Source: Podarcis erhardii (Eukaryota). From it: a DNA stretch of 63,857 nt. The position numbers and the translations under genes are program-made. Shown piece by piece: positions 4,709 to 62,030 of the stretch. Below the pieces are notes generated by a model. That model made no database searches, was not told where the DNA came from, and saw only the letters and a list, made by a program, of their open reading frames with translations. The DNA is taken from assembly GCA_964252035.1 (NCBI GenBank), contig OZ176202.1. One strand, 5' to 3'. Position 1 is the stretch's first letter; each line of letters begins with the position of its first letter.

Positions 4709-6336
4709 TTCAGTCTCCAACAGAAATTAAATTTCTCTTTGCAGTGGGGAAATTGAGAAGTCAACTCATTTTTACTTTCTTCTCAATAAGTAATGTCTGA
4801 ACAAATGCAGTTACTCATCCTGTATAAGAAGCATTACATATCAGAGCTGTTTTACAGCATCTAACATTGTGACATTTATTTTATTACTGTTTTTATTACC
4901 GTATTATTATTATTGCCTATTTCTATATTCCTTCTTTTTTTTTCCATTTTGTAACTTGGGTGTACTCTTTGATTCTGAGCTATCACTCTCTGCGTACAGC
5001 TTTAAAGTTTTTTCAATGAGTTTTTTGGAATTGTAAAACTTATTTTATTCCTTTAAAATATCTCTAATCTTGTCAGGCAAGAGACAAAAAACTGAGGGGA
5101 CTGTGCCTGCCTCCCAGAATTCTTTGCTCTCCGGCCTCCATCATGTGAAGAGGGTTATAACCCAACCCATTCGGGTCATCAGCCACTGCCTCAAATTATC
5201 TCTAGCCTACCCTTTACTGCAAGTGACGCCATTATAAATTATATTATGTTAGTTTATCAATTAAGAATGGGATTTCAGTTGTTGGGATACAATGATGGCA
5301 GGAAAAGGGTCATGCTTATTTTGTGCACCCAAGGATATAGACAGAGTGGGTAAAAATGGGTGCCACCCAACATGGTCTCAAAAACCCAAACCCTGATTTA
5401 CAAATAGTTTAAAATGACAGTTGCAGAAGTCCTAATGTCTCCAACAGAATGAAATAGTATCTGCAAATGCTTTTTACCTAGTTGCGTATCATTCTCAAAG
5501 ACAGGTAATAGGCCTTCTATCCTGTAACCATGATTCATATAGCCTTGTATACACACAATATTTTTTTCTATCTGGCTGCAGCTGCTCATACCATGGCCAG
5601 ATGCTACTCTGGAGGTTTCCCCAAACCCTTGGGCACGCCTTTTAGGTATAGCTGAATGACTATGATGAAAGAAATGCCCTGGGAACTCCTAGTGCATGCT
5701 TGGCTGTTGAGATCTTGGCCGGAATGTTTCACATGGTGATGGATATGCAAATAATATAACCCCCAGATGGAGGCTGACAAAAACTAGTTATGCATGAAGA
5801 TAATCCATGTGTAGACTGCTGCATTTCAGTTCTTTCCACATGCGCTATACCAAACTAATGACTAGGTTAACATGCCTTTTCAGAGGCCTGTTATGAAATT
5901 AGGTAGTAATTCTCAGTCAACTGGAGAACCAAAGCCAAGCGTGACTTCTTTTCTTTTCTTGGTGTATCTTAGCTACTGTAGAAGCAATAGATAATAATCA
6001 CTGGCCTCTCATAATCCAAATCCAAGTTCAAAATGCTATGTACTACAGCACTAGATCTGAAAAAGAATCCTGACATCCCAAACATTAGCAGTCTTACATG
6101 TTACAGTTTTATAGCAAAAAAAGCATTAATTTGGTTAAAAAGCTGAATGACTTATGAATAAACCAGCCATTTAGCAGTGAAGGAGATTCAGCTAATCCCT
6201 TACCATTTTTCATTAGATTCAGCAACTTTAAAGCTACACTTTATTATTAAAAATGTTTCATGTATGTCCCTATCAACCGAAAAGGGAAAGTGCTGACAGG
6301 ACAAATTATTGAATTAAGGTTGAAAAACTCTCGTAC

Positions 6337-8187
6337 CTGCTGAAGGATTATGAGCTGATGACAGAGATTTGGATTTGGAGTCCGAAAGGCGAGATATGCT
6401 GTTCGCTCTCATTCTAGGAGAAACTTTAGTGCTGTCTGCTGGCGGTGTTATCCTAATGCCACTTCTAATTATGGCTTCTGGAGTACGAGATGATGTCGTG
6501 CTTCTAGACATTGTTGCTTCAGAGTCACTACGCGCTGATAAAGAACCAAGTCTATTTCTCCGTGGCTGAGCAAGCAGGTCAATTCTTGAGATATTTCTCC
6601 TTCCAGATGGGGGTTTGGAAGTGGAACTTGTAGTAGACACCTCAGAAGCAACGGATGCTTTATCCGCATCCGCTAGTTCACTATCTGACACTTCACCAAG
6701 TCGCGCTCGACGTAAGAGAGAAGTCCTTGTGGGGCGAGGCCTTGGGAGAGTGGTTGATTTACTGGACTGCCCAGCTGATGCTGGAGAGGTCCTCAACTTG
6801 GCTGACTTGATACCTTCTGTTTTGGAATGTAAATGTTCATCTGCTGAGGTAAAAGATGTCCTTCCATGTGATTTGCCAGAGCATGTTTCCTGGTCGGAAG
6901 ATAAGATATCAGAAATGGCAGAATGAGGTACACTGGAAGTTTGGTCGTCATCTGTTAAATCTACAGAAGGCTGCCTTATTCTTCCACTGCTCTGCACAAC
7001 CTTGCGTGCATCACCTCTCGAACCAGCATCTGAAGATCGGCTTTTTGTTTTCTTCTCAATTTTGTCTCTAGCGCTTGTAGAAGATGACTTTGAAGCATCC
7101 TTTGAAGGTGAACCAGTGGAACATCTATCTTTGTACAGGGTACTAAAGCTTTTTCGTTTCTGAGATTGCTTTCTTTCACTGTCGCCAGTAACAAGGCTAA
7201 TTGTACTAGCTGTATCCACATCTGATTCAGGCGAAATGGAATTATCTCTATTATAGCTGGGAGTATCAGGTCCTTCGTCGGTTTTGTTTTCTTCACGCAG
7301 CTTCGCTTCAAGAAAAGCCATTACAGCTTCAGTGTCCTTTAAGATAAGTGTTGTATCTAGACTAGAGTCTGTTTCCACGGAATCACTTTTCTCACTTATT
7401 CTACTAGTGGATGTTAAAGACAGTGATGGCGGAGTAGTTCCTGTCTGTTTATTGATGTGAGGGATTAGTTCTATAGGTATATTTGTACTTGGTTTATCTA
7501 TGGTAAAGCTGCCTTGTCTCACCAGCGGCTTTGATGATTCTTTTTTATCCCCACTAAACCCTTTTGGAGTTGGACATCTTGTTGCATCTTCCGCTTTCCT
7601 TCTTTTCCCGTCACTTTGCACCACTTTACTTTCTGCTTTGCCAGAACCACGCCCTGATGCTTTCTCTTTATTGTCTGCTTTATGAGAAAGAGGTGGCTCG
7701 TCTCTACTTCTTTCAGCTTGGTTTGTTGTTTTTGAAGAAGATAATTTAGTGGGGGTACAGTGTGTTACCTCCTTTTGTTCCTGCTGCTTAATTTTAGCCA
7801 AAGCTTGTTTTACCACCGATGTTTCTCTGCCATTTTCACTCTTCTCTTTGTCAGAAGAAAAGGAACTGTTGGAGTGAAGAAGTGCCTTGTCTGCTTTAGG
7901 AGACAGGCCATTCATTGCCCTGCTTGCTTTAGTCACGCTCCTGTCACTAATTTGCCCTATTTCTTTCTGGGTATGAGTTGGAGTTTCTTTCTCTTGAAGT
8001 TCAGTGTCTTGTTTTTCACCTATCTCCGATCGCTGGTGGGTTGTAACCTTTGTTCTTTGTCCTTCTGTGGCATTTTCCTCCTTGGGCAACTGTGGAAGTG
8101 TTCGCCTCTTTCTATCTCCTTGGCTGGTCAAAGAGGCAGCAGAGGCAGCACTTCTAGCTGACAGGCCGGATTCACTGATATCTGTAT
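6337..8187 (-). CDS. CEP170: CEP170 large coding exon (1851 nt, 617 codons)
   Basis: Acceptor ttttAG|AT ACA GAT and donor GCA G|GTACGA. Translation includes [39 protein letters not shown] and [18 protein letters not shown]; phase 1 to phase 1. Confidence 0.96.
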
Positions 8188-8326
8188 CTAAAACATAGGA
8201 AAATGGGGAGAGGGAAAACATGTTAAGTAAAAGCACTTGTGTGGGATTCACCTGACAAGCCGTGTCAGTGGAAGCCCTGGGCAAGGACTTCCACTTCTGT
8301 AATAAGGCATACCCTCACAACAGCAC

Positions 8327-15821: not shown

Positions 15822-17019
15822 GGGCTAGGGACAAAGGTAAGAGCTGTTTCCTAGTTCTGCTGGATCTCTCAGCGGCTTTTGATACAATCGACCATGACAT
15901 CCTTCTGCACTGTCTAGAGGAGCTGGGGGCACTGTTATACAGTGGTCCCGCTCCTTCCTCCTGGGCTGTGTCCAGAAAGTGGTGGTAGGGGATGAGTGTT
16001 CACTGGGCCCTCACTTGTGGGGTGCCTTAGGGTTCCGTCCTCTCCCCCATGCTTTTTAACATCTACATGAAGCCGCTGGGATAGATCATCAGGGGGTTTG
16101 GGCTGGGTGTCCATCAATATGTGGATGGTACCCAACTCTACCTCTCTTTTAAATCGGAACCAGTGAAGGCAGTGAAGGTCCTGTGTGAGTGTCTGGAGGC
16201 GGTTGGAGGATGGATGGCAGCTAATGGATTGAGGTTGAATCCTGACAAGACAGAAGTACTGTTCTTGGGGGACAGGGGGCAGGCTGGTGTGGAGGACTCC
16301 CTAGTCCTGAATGGGGTAACTGTGCCCCTGAAGGACAAGGTGTGCAGCCTGGCAGTCATTTTGGACTCACAGCTGTCCATGGAGGTGCAGGTAGATTCTG
16401 TGTCCAGGGCAGCTATCTACCAGCTCCATGGTACGCAGGCTGAGACCCTACCTGCCCGCGGACTGTCTCGCCAGAGTGGTGCATGCTCTAGTTATCTCCC
16501 GCTTGGACTACTGCAATGTGCTCTACATGAGGCTACCTTTGAAGGTGACCCGGAAACTACAATTAATCCAGAATGCGGCAGCTAGACTGGTGACTGGGGG
16601 CGGCTGCCGAGACCATATAACACCAGTCCTGAAAGACCTACATTGGCTCCCAGTATGTTTCTGAGCACAATTCAAAATGTTGGTGCTGACCTTTAAAGCC
16701 CTAAATGGCCTTGGCCCAGTACACCTGAAGTAGCATCTCCACCCCCATCGTTTTGCCCGGACACCAAGGTCCAGTGCCAAGGGCTTTCTGGCGGTTCCCT
16801 CACTGTGAGAAGCAAAGCTACAGGGAAACAGATAGAGGGCCTTTCTTGGTGGTGGCACCCGCCCTGTGGAACGCCCTCCTATCAGATGTCAAAAAGATAA
16901 ACAACTACCTGACATTTAGAAGACATCTGAAGGCAGATCTGTTTAGAGAAGCTTTTAATGTGTGACATTTTGATGTATTTTTAATCTTTGTTGGAAGCTG
17001 CCCAGAGTGGCTGGTACAA

Positions 17020-24345: not shown

Positions 24346-25239
24346 AGGATTAAGTCCTATTAGGATTAGAATTGCAGTCTAAATGGTTATAGGGATTATA
24401 GTATGCATGTTTAGGAAACTGTAACTAGCTCATTTTCTCACAAAATTATTTTTTATATATTCCTTGGGTTGCATCCAAATTTGGGAACCATGGGGATCTG
24501 CTTTTGCTAAACGAAGGGGAATGATTTTAATTTTTTTGGCCACTTCCTTCTCCTTGCAGCCCCCTGAAAATCTACTGTGGGTGGTCAGGGACCCTTGGGA
24601 GCAGCACAAGTGGTGGCCCTGCCAGTGGGCTGCAGAAGGTCAATATGGCCAATGCTCACAGCGCTAGTAGTCTCTTGTACCGTTGTTCATTGTGTATGTG
24701 AGGTCATCCATGGCTATCAAAAGGAGAGCTAGTCCAGTAAAGTTGCCAGGGAAAGAAAATAACACCAGGAGAGAAACTTCTGGAGGATGGCAGACTTCCT
24801 ATCTCTGCTTTAAATGGATATACTTGACCAAATTATTAAGGTTCTTTTTTTAAAGGGCGAGAGAAGAATCTTGCTAAATATTAGTGCTGAACTTTAATAG
24901 TTGCTTAAAAGTTTGTTTTATTACAAACTTGATACAAGACAGGTGGAGTATCGGGCTTCATTCTTTTCACTGTATAGCAGTCAACATGATTGGAAAATAG
25001 AAAAATCTGTTTAACACATAGTTTGTATGTACTCAAGAAGTCCGTTCAAAATACCCTTTTGTTGCCTAGTACATAGCTTGCAATGAGGGATAAAATACTA
25101 AGAGTTCAAAATGTGGCTTTAAAAATAATCTATTTTTAAAAACACCCTGATTTATTAGAATAATCGTAGTTACTAGGACCCCACCATAAACACCATGGAT
25201 TGGGGTTTTAACAATGGCACTCTTATTTAAATTGCTTAC

Positions 25240-25856
25240 CTTATCAATCATCTTGCGAGCTTCTACTTCCTCAGCATTGGGATTTTCCAGTTCAATAGTG
25301 TAAGTACCTTTATCACTTTGGTCATCCTCCTCCTTTTCAACAGCCACCGAAACGACCTGGCTTTTAATCTTTTTCTCCATGTCCTCAGTTGTACTTGGTC
25401 TATTTCCAAGACTTCCAGAACTTCTCAATAAAGCAGTTTGTAAGAAAGGCAGTGCAGCAGAAGGCTCTTCTGACTTTTGCTTCAGAAGTTTTGCATGTAC
25501 TGCTCTTTGTTGGGCGGAGCTATTCTGCGAAGGTGATAAACTGCCTTTGGAGTCGTCAGTTCTTGTAGGGGGTGCCGGAGAAGATGTTTCAGGGAGCAGA
25601 ACTCCCACGTTTTGAGAAAAGGAATAAGATCTCCTCTTCCGGGAATGGCCTTCATCAAAAAACTCAATCATAAAAGCAGTCTGACTAACAGTTGGCTGGT
25701 CTGAATGTTTCTCTGTGTCCTGGGATTTTGTGTGCAATTTTTTCTGCTCAGCATAATGATGCCTTAGCTGTTCTTCAAGTGCTGCCCGTCTACTGTAATG
25801 CCTGCGTGCTCCGGCATTTTCTGAATCGCTCTGTGTCCCATCATCATGTTTATTTC
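25240..25856 (-). CDS. CEP170: CEP170 coding exon ([13 protein letters not shown]...EARKMIDK), containing an internal GT-AG segment
   Basis: Acceptor ttttgtctttgcAG|GA AAT and donor AAG|GTAAGC; 617 nt, phase 1 to 0. Confidence 0.95.
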
Positions 25857-28308: not shown

Positions 28309-28779
28309 CTTTCAGTCTCTTCAAGTAGACTGGAACATCACTCTTAATACTTTTTGAATCTTCCTCTGTTGATTCCCAGATCATTGTTGGGGGATTGTTT
28401 TGTGCTAACCAGTTTGCCACTTTGCTCTCCGGGGCCATCATCACAGTTTGAAGCCCAGGAAGATCCTGGGCACCAGAAGGAGAAGGCTTCTTAGATTTGT
28501 GGCGCTGATCTGGAGTGAATTTTGTAACATGATCTTTGATGGTTACTTTTCCTGGGGTGCTGTCATCAAATTCAATAGTAAATGAAGCATGCCCTGCCCC
28601 TGCTATGTGTGTGTCTTTTGTTGGGATCTCATGAATAGTACCCTCAGGTATTTGGGAATGTTGATGGAATTCCTTTGTAGGGATTTCAAAATAACTTGGC
28701 TCCCTACAGAAAGGATAATTTTCTTCTTCACTTGCAGCTGCAGATTGCTCCTCAGCTTGCTTGCCATCTGTGCTGCATC
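28309..28779 (-). CDS. CEP170: CEP170 coding exon (GCSTDGKQ...[15 protein letters not shown]...VPVYLKRLK)
   Basis: Acceptor ttttcttaatAG|GA TGC and donor AAA G|GTAAAA; 471 nt, phase 1 to 1. Confidence 0.95.
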
Positions 28780-46086: not shown

Positions 46087-46308
<222 letters not shown>

Positions 46309-57735: not shown

Positions 57736-59306
57736 ATAGTTGTGATAGTCATGAAGGTAGAATTTAAAAAAGGGATACAGATATCAGCCTTTTTAGTGTG
57801 GAGCTGCTCTCTACCATTCTCCGAGACAAAAATGGGAATATGTAAAGTCACACAGGCATTTAAATAAAAGAAGTACAGCAGAGACAAGGTGATAAGGTTA
57901 ATATATAAAGTGTAAAGGAAAGGGAGGAAAGAAAATGACAACATTGTTTGTGCACATTGTAGGAAATTAGGGAGCTCCAGATCTCAAAACAGAACAAGAG
58001 CTTCAAAATCATTTAGCTAAAACAAAGATTTATGCTAATTACACTATATTTACAGACATTCTCTCTACCCCTCAAAAAAAGGAGACTTTATGAACTATGA
58101 GACCTTTTAAAGTTCCATGAAGATGAAGTATTCTAAAGTAAGAGACTACTAGTGAGAAAGTGAAGCAGCTGCTATTCTATCAGCACCCATGGTACAAATT
58201 ATTCAACCACTGTTGAATTTTGTTGCTGGACCACACACACCAGTCTGGCCAGAGTGTCCAAAACAACAACCAAGTTGTTTAACAGATGTATATAAATAAT
58301 CTTATGTTAAATATAATTCATTGCCTTAGAATACCCTTTTCAAGTGCAGAGTAGTACCAATGTGATACACCAGATCGGCACAATCCTAGTCATAGTTTAG
58401 GAACTTGAGTGCATTGCTTCAAATAAATATTTTATTAAGAATATCTTTTGCACTTAATGAATGTGAAAACAACTGAATCCAAGGGATTCCATTTTAGATA
58501 ACACATTGTCTGGTTGCTCTGAAGTTCTGTTTTGTTTTTATCAGCATATTGTACTTGCTTTGGTTATACACAATATTGTTGGAAGCACTTGCTTAAAATT
58601 TGTTTAAAAGCTAACAAGTAGCTCAAACAGCAACTTATTTACAATTCAATGACTGCATGCAAGTATCATATTCTGAACAGTTACAGCCCATTTTTAATGT
58701 ATTTAACAATTTCCTGATCAGATGCTGAAGCAACATCATGCCTGATCCTGGAGACTAACTAGATTAAGTGAATCATAAATGCACCAGAACACAATTTTGA
58801 GCAGAAACACTCCTCTTCCCTTCCCCATTTCTAGCATCAGGCTCCAAGCAATGAGTGGATGAGATCACAAAAGAAGGCTCATCTGTAGAGCTGTCATATG
58901 GTTTTCAGTCCAGTCAGCTTCCTCTTTCACAAAAAACTGAATATTTGAAAACCAGGCTAAGATTTTTATTGCCTTTGTAACCAATCCATTTCACTTCCAA
59001 GAAAGCTGCTATGACTACACATATCTCACTCGTGCACAAAATGAATGACTTGCAATGATGCCTTCGACAAAAGGCCGTTACTTTCCGGTCTGTTTAGTTT
59101 TCGAGAAGCCATATGCATTTCCCTAGGGATCCTTTTCATACACAGAAGACCACAACGGAAACGAATTCACAAAACAATTATCAGAAGGAACATCAGCAGA
59201 AGGGAGGGGGGAGAAAATGTGCATAGAAATGTAAATCCATGCCTCGTTTTAGATAAAGGCTGCTTACAATCAGAGCTGCATGCCAGGCTGAAAAAGAGAA
59301 GCTTCA

Positions 59307-59364
59307 AATTATTATTATTATTACTAATAATTATTAGTATTAGTATTACTACTACTACTACTAT
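59307..59364. repeat. (TTA)n/(CTA)n compound microsatellite
   Basis: Seen directly. Confidence 0.85.
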
Positions 59365-60075
59365 TGCACACAAACGCCTTTTCTATTTATCGGCCAGATG
59401 GTTTTTGTCGTTGTTGTCGTTTCCTAAACGAGGGCCCGTAAAACGAATCGGAAGCAAATGGACAGATGAGAATCCACAGTGGAAAGGGAGGGAGGGGGGA
59501 GAGAGAGAAAGAAGGAAACCGATCCCAGAAGAAAAGGCACAAAGCAAAGAAGCTGCACTCACGCCCCTTCTAGACATGTTTTCCACGCAGAAGCGTATGC
59601 GAGCTGACGAGAGGAGAAGGGGCTCGAAGCCTCCACCCCACTGGAGAGAGCGCCCGGGGGGAAGGTTTGTTATCTTGCAGGAGGAAGGGGAGGAAAGAGG
59701 AAACGGTGGTTTTAGTAGCTCCATCTGTATCCAATCTGGGCCATTGCAACCCCCACCCCTCGCCTCCGTGCAAGAGCCGCAGCCTCCTCTGTGGAGTGAG
59801 TCCCAGAGGGACAATGCTCAGCGGGCAGGAATAGCAGAAAGCATTGGAAGAAGGGCTCGGAAAAGAGCCCGTGTCACTGAGGGGCATGCGAGGCACCCGC
59901 CTCCCCTGAGGAGGAGGGCGAGGGCAGCAGGCGGAGCGGGAGGCATACAAGGCGCCGCATTTAGGGCTCCATCCCCGGCCGGGGGAAGGGAAGGCGCCGC
60001 GGCGCTCGGGCGGAGGGGTCCCCCCGCCCGCAGCATCACTCACCCCGCTTGGGAAAGGCAAAAGCGCTGGCTCAC

Positions 60076-60330
60076 AGGCCCACCATCTTCTCCACAGAGA
60101 GGAGGACGCGGAGGGAGGAGGAGGAGGAGGAGGGGAAGGGCGCTCGCGGACTCCCCGCCTCTCAGTGCCGCTCTGGCTGTGTAAGCAACCGCTCGAACGT
60201 TATTCCCAGCATATAGCGGCTAACGGCGCGGAACAGGGGGAAGCTATTGCGCAGGCGCCGCCTCAGCTCGCCAGCGCGGAGAGAGAGCGAGAGAGGAGGA
60301 GGGAGGAGGGGGGAGGGGAAATGAAAAGAA
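60076..60330 (-). other. CEP170: Candidate non-coding first exon of CEP170
   Basis: Lies in the CpG island with donor-like CCT|GTGAGC at 60076/60075 (alternative ATG|GTGGGC at 60084/60083) and a pyrimidine-rich 5' part. The TSS is not determinable from sequence. Confidence 0.5.
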
Positions 60331-61247
60331 TGGATTTGCAGCGCCTCAGAACGGAACCACTGCGCATGCGCGCTTCCCAGCGAGCAGGCTCGCACTGCGC
60401 AGGCGTCCTGTTCCAGACAATGGGGATAATAATAATAATAATAATTGATAATAATAGTCTCCTCTCCATTGGGAAATAGAAATGTAGAGTTTGGAGGATA
60501 CGTTAATGAGACGAGAAACATCATATTTTGCCCTGTGCGATCGCTGCACACGCCTTGCTTCTGCGGTGGGCGTGAGCGAAGAGTAAAAAACGCGCCCGAG
60601 CGCGCGGTTGGGTTGAGGGGGGGGTGTATTGTGCGCACGACCTCAAACGAGGATGAACGCAGCTATTGTGGTACCGCTGGCAGCCACAGACGTATTGTTC
60701 TACGTTGTTGTGGTGCGAAACAACTACAACTCCCAGAAGCACCTGCGGCAAAGCCTTGTGGGCGTAACGCCATAGTAATGGCGCGTTGCATGCCGGGCAG
60801 GGGGGGCTGGAACGCTTTCTGCTTCTTTAGCGCCGCGCGAGGCGGCGGGGCTTCCCGTCTGCCTCAGGGGGAGATGTCGTTTCCGCCTTTCGCCAGCTTC
60901 GTGGCCGGCCTGGGCAGCGCCTCCTCGCCCTCCTCCTCCGTCACCAAGCGGGACCTAGAAAAAGACCGTTGCTTGGTTGTCTAGCAACGAGCTTCCTCGT
61001 GAGAGGCGTCGGAAGCGCGCCGCTCCCCATCCTGGGAGTTGTAGTCCCTCCGCGTTCAGCTTTCCCATACTGTTGAGCGGTAGTAGGAGCAAGGCTGGAC
61101 TACAGCGACCGAGAGCCACCGGGGAAAGCCTAGAAAAAGGTTTCCCTCACGCGCCTCCCAATGCAGGAGTCTGTCGGAGCCACGGAAAGAGCGGCGGCGT
61201 GTAGCCCGAGACCCGACTGGGGAAGCTCGCCGAGTTACTCTCCCTCC

Positions 61248-61314
61248 ATGAGGGAGGCCGGAGGGGAGTCGGGCTTGGCGGAGTCTCTGGAGCGGTGTCA
61301 GCAAAGCCTGCACG
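61248..61314 (+). CDS. SDCCAG8: SDCCAG8 first coding exon (MREAGGESGLAESLERCQQSLH+G)
   Basis: 22 codons plus 1 nt, ending CAC G|GTGAGA. It resembles human MAKSPENSTLEEILGQYQRSLR(E) in length, phase and the L..SL...Q.SL pattern as I recall. SDCCAG8 is the known head-to-head neighbour of CEP170. Confidence 0.75.
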
Positions 61315-61834
61315 GTGAGAGAGCGAGAGGCGGGAAGGCAGGTTTGGCTCGCGGGTCCTCCTTTCAGACCCCCCCCCATGAACTCCTGTCGCCCCCCTCA
61401 GTGCTGCTCAGCACCGACAGATGCGCCTTGCAGCGCTTTAGGGATGCGTCTTTAGAAATGTGCACCAAGCCAAGCCCGTAGAACTGTGTGCATCAGGCTG
61501 AAAAAAGTAGCGGATTCGCCAAAACTGCAACTGCCAGCTGTCGGGTATTTGGTCTGCCTTGGGTTCACTGGTGCATTTTGTTTTTTGTTTTGTTTTTTAT
61601 CGAGGTGACACCTCTTCCCACTCTGTATACTCCATATCCTGACCCCTCTGCCCTTATGTGAGACTCTCCCATGTCCTGGAGGCTCCTTAAAGGCTCTTCA
61701 GGGTCTCCCTTCTGATAAATGCCTTTTTATTGAGGAAGGTTATTGGTGGTTGCTGTGCAAGTTGCACCCACTCTTCAATGAAACTGATTTTCTTAATTCT
61801 TTTTTGGTCTGGCTTTGACACAGATAGTTCAGTA

Positions 61835-62030
61835 GGAGGTGTGTGACCTGCTGATTCTCCTGAACCTCTGTCCTGCTTTTGATACCACTGACAATGGTGG
61901 CTTATACAGGCTGACCAGATTGGGAATTGGGAGGCAACAAGTGGTGGTGGTTCCCTTCAGAAGTTTTGCTCCTGCTTGGATGATTTCAGTAGATGGACTG
62001 CAAGTGGGAGCCAACTGCTTGACTTCATTA
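61835..62030 (+). mobile_element. Decayed L2 RT remnant
   Basis: LLILLNLCPAFDTTDNG parallels LVLLDLSAAFDTIDH; probably continues at about 62760-63200. Confidence 0.55.

What the first reader, a model, noticed from the sequence alone, without database searches (positions are those of the whole stretch)
25525..25689. 165-nt in-frame exitron inside a CEP170 exon
Within the 617-nt open exon is a segment starting GTTAGT and ending ...ttatcaccttcgCAG, with a branch-like ACTGAC whose A is 31 nt from the 3' end. It is exactly 55 codons with no stop. Removing it gives HSDQPT|NSSAQQR, which aligns with the canonical human HQDQAV|TSSAHHR as I recall. Retaining it adds [26 protein letters not shown]...SPSQ, with a basic RKRR patch and serines in basophilic-kinase context. 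The same DNA serves as both intron and coding sequence, so it could act as a switch for a regulatory or localisation module.
Basis: partly seen in the sequence, partly recalled or inferred. Interest (0 to 1): 0.75.

Follow-up and report, generated by a model that had tools for sequence, protein, structure and literature searches.

The report
CEP170 exon segment that mammals splice out
The 165-base GT...AG stretch inside this lizard CEP170 exon matches exactly the piece that mammals remove as an intron, but in lizards and birds it looks like ordinary, strongly conserved coding sequence, so a splicing switch here is possible but unproven.

Summary
A 617-nt minus-strand CEP170 exon (25240-25856) contains an in-frame, stop-free 165-nt segment (25525-25689) that starts GTTAGT and ends CAG. 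Its borders match the junction seen in mammalian CEP170 mRNAs (HQDQAV|TSSAHHR).

The exitron reading is only partly supported. The segment encodes an ancient motif, [20 protein letters not shown], found from hagfish to birds and in CEP170B-like proteins.
- **Constraint:** in sauropsids its first 28 codons are the most constrained part of the exon (dN/dS about 0.07-0.10).
- **Bird isoforms:** 228 of 231 fetched bird isoforms keep the segment. The three that lack it look like homology-projected models.
- **Splice signals:** of the sauropsid sequences compared, only this lizard and its closest relative have both GT and AG. Both sites score below the pangolin and desman sites on my own matrix.
- **Branch motif:** ACTGAC is created by a 21-nt in-frame deletion specific to this window.
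- **Mammals:** pangolin and desman have GTAAGT plus a strong pyrimidine tract, and the motif evolves almost neutrally there.

Most likely this is translated exon sequence, orthologous to a segment intronized in mammals. It is an ordinary case of a known kind. The scan had not noted it before.

The parts
25240..25856 (-). 617-nt internal coding exon of CEP170 (phase 1 at its 5' end, ends on a full codon)
   Evidence: AG at 25858-25857 and GTAAGC from 25239. Open frame of 205 full codons. Aligns to falcon CEP170 residues 363-599. Own-matrix site scores 11.2 and 10.9.
25525..25689 (-). The 165-nt in-frame GT...AG segment (55 codons, [26 protein letters not shown]...SLSPSQ). Orthologous to the 186-189-nt segment spliced out of mammalian CEP170 mRNA.
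   Evidence: Mammalian skip junction. Nucleotide alignment.
25684..25689 (-). Candidate internal donor ACT|GTTAGT (weak)
   Evidence: Own matrix 2.7, against 6.1 for pangolin and desman GTT|GTAAGT and 10.9 for the exon's real donor. GT is absent in the gecko-like L006, L005 and bird L008.
25525..25544 (-). Candidate internal acceptor GCAGTTTATCACCTTCGCAG|A (moderate)
   Evidence: Own matrix 6.4, against 10.1 in pangolin and desman. AG is replaced by CTA or CAA in L002, L003/4, L005 and L007.
25555..25560 (-). Branch-like ACTGAC. It spans the junction of a window-specific 21-nt in-frame deletion, between 25556 and 25555.
   Evidence: The closest relative L001 and all other amniotes aligned carry 21 or so more bases here (ACTGAAAAAGTGAGACCTGCATCAGGCGAC).
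25612..25680 (-). Ancient conserved motif [23 protein letters not shown]. It has an FFAT-like EFFDEGH core at 25645-25665 and a basic/serine patch RKRRSYSFS at 25615-25641.
   Evidence: Present from hagfish, ray, teleost and frog to birds, and in CEP170B-like proteins. dN/dS 0.07-0.10 in sauropsids. Coordinates.

Best explanation
In this lizard the 165-nt segment is, mostly or wholly, translated sequence of one constitutive 617-nt CEP170 exon. It encodes an old short linear motif in the disordered middle of the protein: a hydrophobic-acidic FMIEFFDE core followed by RKRRSYSFS. This is probably a docking site whose use is tuned by basophilic-kinase phosphorylation (inferred). The same orthologous stretch was turned into an intron in the mammalian lineage. 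There it has a consensus GTAAGT donor and a strong pyrimidine tract, mRNAs lack it, and the motif drifts almost neutrally. The lizard's GT and AG sit at the homologous places. Sauropsids do not keep them as a pair, so they are best read as ordinary codons (Val GTT, Gln CAG) that could at most support minor splicing. Shown here: anatomy, homology of the borders, splice-signal gain and loss across lineages, selection pattern, and isoform content of databases. Inferred: constitutive use in this species, and the motif's function.
For: (1) The motif is present and aligned in hagfish, stingray, teleost, frog, turtle, gecko, skink, birds and CEP170B-like proteins. (2) dN/dS of segment codons 1-28 is 0.07 across eight sauropsid sequences, 0.10 in squamates alone and 0.08 between two birds. 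That is as low as or lower than the flanking exon parts (0.13-0.15). It is about 0.9 between pangolin and desman. (3) All indels in the segment are multiples of three, including the window's own 21-nt deletion. (4) GT and AG occur together only in the window and its 95.6%-identical relative L001. Skink-like L002 and L003/4 have GTAAGT but CTA or CAA at the acceptor. L005 has GCGAGT and CAA. Gecko-like L006 and bird L008 have TTA or TTG. Bird L007 has GTGAAT and CAA. The turtle protein has Ile at the donor codon. (5) 228 of 231 fetched bird CEP170 isoforms with both flanks keep the segment. The 3 exceptions are 'CE170 protein, partial' models with an odd junction. Gecko, skink and turtle gene models also keep it. 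(6) Pangolin and desman sites are strong (6.1 and 10.1 on my matrix, against 2.7 and 6.4 here). Mammalian fragments that run across exon junctions all lack the segment. (7) Weak: runs guessed to be RNA from relative 'organism A' hold the same share of the exon's words (0.64) as that species' runs with genome-sized contig sets (unlabelled, probably DNA). Contigs lacking 27% of the exon would not.
Against: The window does have both GT and AG at exactly the mammalian positions, with a usable pyrimidine tract and a branch-like motif at a good distance. Exitrons typically have weak sites, so weak scores do not exclude use. Purifying selection on the retained form is compatible with alternative splicing. 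An alligator model (P0010) joins at the same donor position to a farther acceptor. Squamate transcript-derived fragments were absent from the searches, so 'no skipped squamate form found' rests on only two gene models (a gecko and a skink).
Confidence: 0.66

Rival explanations
1. A true exitron in this lizard. The spliceosome removes 25689-25525 from part of the transcripts, giving two CEP170 isoforms with and without the [17 protein letters not shown] module. On this view the dual-use state is ancestral to amniotes and was lost in geckos and birds.
For: GT and AG lie at exactly the positions used in mammals. It is the best-scoring in-frame pair in the exon. The length is 3n and the region is disordered, as is typical of exitrons. 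GTAAGT also occurs in skink-like relatives and mammals, so the donor hexamer may be ancestral to amniotes. Alligator model P0010 uses the same donor position.
Against: The GT/AG pair is not co-conserved in any other sauropsid sampled. The relatives with the best donor lack the acceptor. The branch-like motif is new to this window. No sauropsid transcript or RNA-informed model lacks the segment. The donor has T at +3 and CT at -2 and -1, and scores 2.7.
Confidence: 0.27
2. A constitutive short intron, as in mammals. The segment would always be removed in this lizard, and its open frame would be a leftover.
For: Canonical GT...AG and an open 3n frame are also seen in the pangolin and desman copies, where mRNAs lack the segment.
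Against: Very strong purifying selection on the encoded motif in squamates and birds (dN/dS 0.07-0.10). The splice dinucleotides are lost in sister lineages that keep the frame. The sites are weak. Gecko and skink models translate it.
Confidence: 0.03
3. Pure coincidence with no biological relation to the mammalian splice event.
For: 121 in-frame GT..AG pairs exist in the exon. With GT in about half and AG in about half of sauropsid lineages, one lineage with both is expected by chance.
Against: The borders are positionally homologous to the mammalian junction at single-codon resolution, so the relation to the mammalian intron is real even if the sites are unused here.
Confidence: 0.04

Closest known systems
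Mammalian CEP170 mRNA and isoforms lacking this segment (Pongo abelii isoform 19, Monodelphis isoform X19, Meriones and Galemys models, Logan transcript fragments)
   Same: Identical junction position (…DQxx|xSSAxxR) and the same exon. In pangolin and desman the excised piece is also 3n and open.
   Different: Pangolin and desman have GTAAGT and TTTCTTTGTCTTTACAG, and every fragment found that runs across exon junctions lacks the segment. The lizard has GTTAGT and a weaker tract, and no skipped transcript is known. The motif is nearly neutral in mammals and strongly constrained in sauropsids.
Exitrons (exonic introns; Marquez et al. 2015, cited from my own knowledge)
   Same: Lies inside a coding exon, has GT-AG borders, no stop, 3n length and weak sites, and encodes a disordered, phosphorylatable region.
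   Different: The defining observation, both spliced and retained mRNAs in the same organism, is missing for this species.
Intronization of coding sequence (Irimia et al. 2008; Catania and Lynch 2008; cited from my own knowledge)
   Same: An ancestral constitutive coding stretch becomes an intron in one lineage (mammals) and stays exon in others.
   Different: Here the intronized piece carried a deeply conserved motif, and in pangolin and desman it still keeps its frame.
CEP170B (KIAA0284), the paralogue
   Same: Carries the same motif ([23 protein letters not shown]) at the same place, and binds partners through extended fragments of its unstructured middle region (PMC12731735, citing Guan et al. 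2023).
   Different: It is a different gene. No role has been assigned to this particular motif in the papers I could read.

Membership tests
CEP170 gene | CEP170 C-terminal domain (Pfam PF15308) | tested here: met
   E=5e-126 on the product of window 6317-8284 minus strand.
CEP170 gene | N-terminal FHA region and collinear exon order with annotated CEP170 | tested here: met
   tblastn of falcon CEP170 isoform X4 maps residues 1-1331 to 12 collinear minus-strand blocks, with the N-terminal blocks 90-100% identical.
Exitron | Lies wholly inside a protein-coding exon, with canonical splice dinucleotides | tested here: met
   25525-25689 lies inside exon 25240-25856, with GT at 25689-25688 and AG at 25526-25525.
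Exitron | No stop codon and length divisible by three, so both forms are translatable | tested here: met
   55 codons in frame.
Exitron | Both the spliced and the retained mRNA are observed in the same organism | tested here: inconclusive
Protein searches found no skipped squamate form, but few squamate transcripts are in range.
   GT and AG occur together only in the window, L001, pangolin and desman. One or both are lost in L002-L008, and ACTGAC is window-specific.
FFAT motif (VAP-binding, consensus EFFDAxE in an acidic tract; from my own knowledge) | Seven-residue core and acidic upstream flank | tested here: inconclusive
   The core is EFFDEGH here, EFFDEDN or EFFDEDH in other vertebrates, and DFFDADN in hagfish. 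The upstream flank QTAFMI is not acidic. No paper links CEP170 or CEP170B to VAP. A lead only.
14-3-3 mode-1 site (RSxpSxP; from my own knowledge) | Arg at -3 or -4, phospho-Ser, Pro at +2 | tested here: not met
   RRSYSFS has the Arg and Ser pattern, but Ser replaces Pro at +2. It still fits basophilic-kinase consensus only loosely (inference).

The most novel reading that the evidence does not exclude
The lizard keeps a working copy of an exitron that arose in the amniote ancestor. On that reading the same 165-186 nt has been both intron and coding sequence for over 300 million years. Mammals shifted it to near-constitutive removal, while birds and geckos lost the sites. Splicing would then toggle an ancient FFAT-like, phospho-regulated docking module of CEP170 on and off.
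Probability: 0.2. Interest if true: 0.55.

Novelty: new member of a known kind. Interest (0 to 1): 0.3.

Why it matters
The work on CEP170 that I know of uses the mammalian protein, whose mRNAs lack this segment. That segment holds the most conserved short motif of this exon in other vertebrates and in CEP170B. The data give a clean example of lineage-specific intronization of a conserved linear motif. They also flag the [17 protein letters not shown] module as an unstudied candidate interaction or phospho-regulation site in non-mammalian CEP170 and in CEP170B. For genome annotation the message is practical. Projecting mammalian CEP170 onto sauropsid genomes wrongly deletes this segment, as three bird models appear to show. 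As a splicing switch in this lizard it remains an untested and rather unlikely possibility.

Tried and rejected
- **Contig look-ups:** The look-up of encoding contigs had no record for the alligator (P0010) or opossum (P0005) isoforms.
- **Papers:** the CEP170B-KIF2A paper (PMC10233374) is not held. 'CEP170' with 'exitron' gave no paper. 'CEP170' with alternative splicing or intron retention gave nothing on this event. 'CEP170' with FFAT and 'CEP170B' with VAPB gave nothing relevant.
- **PP2A-B56 idea:** I considered the LxxIxE motif (prompted), but the residues do not fit it.
- **Open frame in many mammals:** I rejected this as proof of function. ORFs that read through are the only ones the search could return, so there is an ascertainment bias.
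- **Possible human contigs:** I did not fetch contigs for mammal-like Logan proteins of unknown species (for example P0200, P0202, P0205, P0208, P0226), because they could be human. Only named non-human mammals (pangolin, desman) were used for DNA.
- **Bird models without the segment:** three models (P0333, P0416, P0419) have a junction residue absent from the genomic reading. All are 'CE170 protein, partial' entries, so I judge them homology projections rather than transcript evidence (inference).

Full report
**What is there**

On the minus strand, window 25856-25240 is a 617-nt internal exon. It is preceded by ...ttttgtctttgcag and followed by gtaagc. It is open in one frame and gives 205 full codons. 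The gene is CEP170. The large downstream exon matches Pfam CEP170_C at E=5e-126. Falcon CEP170 isoform X4 maps collinearly to 12 minus-strand blocks from 46278 to 1188. The closest named relatives are squamates: a gecko at 72% identity, and a skink identified. A Logan contig, L001, is 95.6% identical in DNA.

The segment 25689-25525 is as described. It starts GTTAGT on a codon boundary and ends TCACCTTCGCAG. It is 165 nt with no stop, and ACTGAC has its A 31 nt from the 3' end.

**Is it more than chance?**

Being stop-free is automatic inside an open exon. A 3n length is a one-in-three event: 121 of 345 GT..AG pairs of 60 nt or more in this exon are 3n. What is not chance is the position. Several mammalian sequences join exactly at these two borders (HQDQAV|TSSAHHR against the lizard's HSDQPT|NSSAQQR):
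- Logan protein fragments that run from the FHA-domain exons through this exon into the next ones (P0207, P0262-P0266, P0270).
- Pongo abelii 'isoform 19' (P0211).
- Monodelphis isoform X19 (P0005).
- Meriones and Galemys models.

**What the segment encodes**

A search of 1.8 billion representatives with the exon and the alignments show that the first half of the segment encodes [10 protein letters not shown](D/G)(N/H)(P/S)[10 protein letters not shown]. This motif is present in:
- hagfish (AFTIDFFDADNPRKRRSASF), stingray, teleost and frog;
- turtle, gecko, skink and birds;
- CEP170B-like proteins (names).

It predates the CEP170/CEP170B split. It is the second of three [AS]F[TM]I[ED] motifs in the protein (window 28562-28585, 25612-25680 and 7487-7513).

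**Splice signals across species**

I aligned the exon with genomic contigs of eight sauropsids and with two named non-human mammals, pangolin and desman.

| Sequence | Donor | Acceptor | Own-matrix scores (donor / acceptor) |
|---|---|---|---|
| Window and L001 | ACT\|GTTAGT | ...CAG | 2.7 / 6.4 |
| L002 (skink-like) | GCT\|GTAAGT | CTA | 5.9 / -15.3 |
| L003/4 (skink-like) | GCT\|GTAAGT | CAA | 5.9 / -7.2 |
| L005 | GCGAGT | CAA | -0.9 / -7.2 |
| L006 (gecko-like) | TTAAGT | CAG | -4.1 / 2.0 |
| L007 (bird) | GTGAAT | CAA | 1.8 / 0.1 |
| L008 (bird) | TTGAGT | CAG | -4.1 / 9.3 |
| Pangolin and desman | GTT\|GTAAGT | TTTCTTTGTCTTTACAG | 6.1 / 10.1 |

- The exon's real sites score 10.9 (donor) and 11.2 (acceptor).
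- The turtle protein has Ile at the donor codon.
- GT and AG therefore occur together only in this lizard's immediate lineage and in mammals.
- With each present in roughly half of the sauropsid lineages, one lineage having both is what chance predicts.
- The branch-like ACTGAC is produced by a 21-nt in-frame deletion found only in the window. L001 and every other amniote aligned have ACTGAAAAAGTGAGACCTGCATCAGGCGAC or its equivalent.
- Segment lengths are 165, 183, 186 or 189 nt, always 3n.

**Selection**

These are Nei-Gojobori estimates on codon alignments.

| Comparison | Segment codons 1-28 | Segment second half | Flanking exon parts |
|---|---|---|---|
| All sauropsid pairs | 0.07 | 0.44 | 0.14 |
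| Squamates only | 0.10 | 0.51 | 0.13-0.15 |
| Two birds | 0.08 | 0.24 | 0.06 / 0.28 |
| Pangolin vs desman | about 0.9 (10.2 nonsynonymous, 2.8 synonymous differences) | 0.40 | 0.10-0.14 |

- The pangolin-desman estimate rests on few differences and is a small sample.
- The motif is strongly protected where the splice signals are absent or weak.
- It is nearly free where the signals are strong.

**Isoform catalogues**

The best 120 hits to the falcon region are all bird isoforms that keep the segment. Adding members of ten 90% clusters gives 231 bird CEP170 proteins with both flanks. Of these, 228 keep the segment. The three that lack it are 'CE170 protein, partial' entries whose junction carries a residue not encoded next to the borders. 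I take them for projections of a mammalian protein (inference). Gecko, skink and turtle gene models keep the segment. An alligator model (P0010) joins at the same donor position to a farther acceptor. Its basis is unknown.

**RNA evidence**

I worked beside them and sent none of their letters to any tool afterwards. One indirect and weak point remains. Three small runs of 'organism A', guessed to be RNA, hold 0.64 of the exon's sampled words. That equals the share held by that species' runs with genome-sized contig sets (unlabelled, probably DNA). Contigs lacking 27% of the exon could not reach that share. Those runs may, however, be DNA.

**Reading**

The best-supported account is lineage-specific intronization.
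- An old, constitutive, motif-bearing stretch of the CEP170 exon is removed as an efficient intron in mammals, and its motif is drifting in the two mammals compared.
- It stayed coding in sauropsids, including, most probably, this lizard (confidence about 0.66).
- A real exitron in this lizard is not excluded (about 0.27). Both dinucleotides are in place, exitrons have weak sites, and selection on the retained form does not forbid a second form.
- A constitutive intron here is very unlikely.

**How the module works (inference)**

- The region is disordered. CEP170B is reported to bind partners through extended fragments of this middle region (PMC12731735).
- The hydrophobic-acidic core resembles an FFAT core (EFFDEGH here, DFFDADN in hagfish). 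It lacks the acidic upstream flank, and no paper links it to VAP.
- RKRRSYSFS fits basophilic kinases. It only partly fits a 14-3-3 site, because it has no Pro at +2.

**Novelty**

Splicing of this piece in mammals is already built into standard annotations. I found no paper describing it as an exitron or as intronization. It is a further example of known kinds of event and not a new mechanism. The scan had not noted it before on other DNA.

Noticed in passing
window 25555-25556 (minus strand): A 21-nt (7-codon) in-frame deletion relative to the closest relative L001 and all other amniotes aligned (EKVRPAS(G) missing).
   Followed up: yes
L001:109-942, equivalent of window 25357-25359: The closest relative's Logan contig (ERR13935990) has TAG where the window has CAG, a premature stop inside this CEP170 exon. 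It could be a read or assembly error, a heterozygous variant, or a real truncation.
   Followed up: no
window 28562-28585, 25612-25680, 7487-7513 (minus strand): CEP170 carries three copies of an [AS]F[TM]I[ED] motif ([29 protein letters not shown]), conserved from fish to birds. The mammalian mRNAs found here lack the middle one.
   Followed up: partly
P0262, P0263, P0265, P0266 (mammalian Logan transcript fragments): These fragments run across exon junctions, lack the segment, and then read past ...ARKMIDK into the downstream intron (KVNN, KVKH) and stop. This hints at a short isoform ending by intronic termination after this exon.
   Followed up: no
P0333, P0416, P0419 (bird 'CE170 protein, partial' models): These are the only three bird models lacking the segment. 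Their junction (…QAGL|TSSSHH) has a residue not encoded beside the borders. They are probably artefacts of projecting a mammalian protein onto bird genomes.
   Followed up: partly
window 16121-16858, both strands: ORFs resembling a retrotransposon reverse-transcriptase fragment (…LRLNPDKTEVLFLG…) lie in a GC-richer patch (0.48) of the intron.
   Followed up: no
window 59000-62000: GC rises to 0.57 with long Arg/Gly/Pro-rich spurious ORFs. This is likely the CpG-island promoter and 5' end of CEP170, upstream of the first coding block at 46278.
   Followed up: no
window 25110-25145: This intronic stretch tripped the reads tool's filter, which by its own message also trips by chance. Nothing was laid, and I avoided these letters afterwards.
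   Followed up: no
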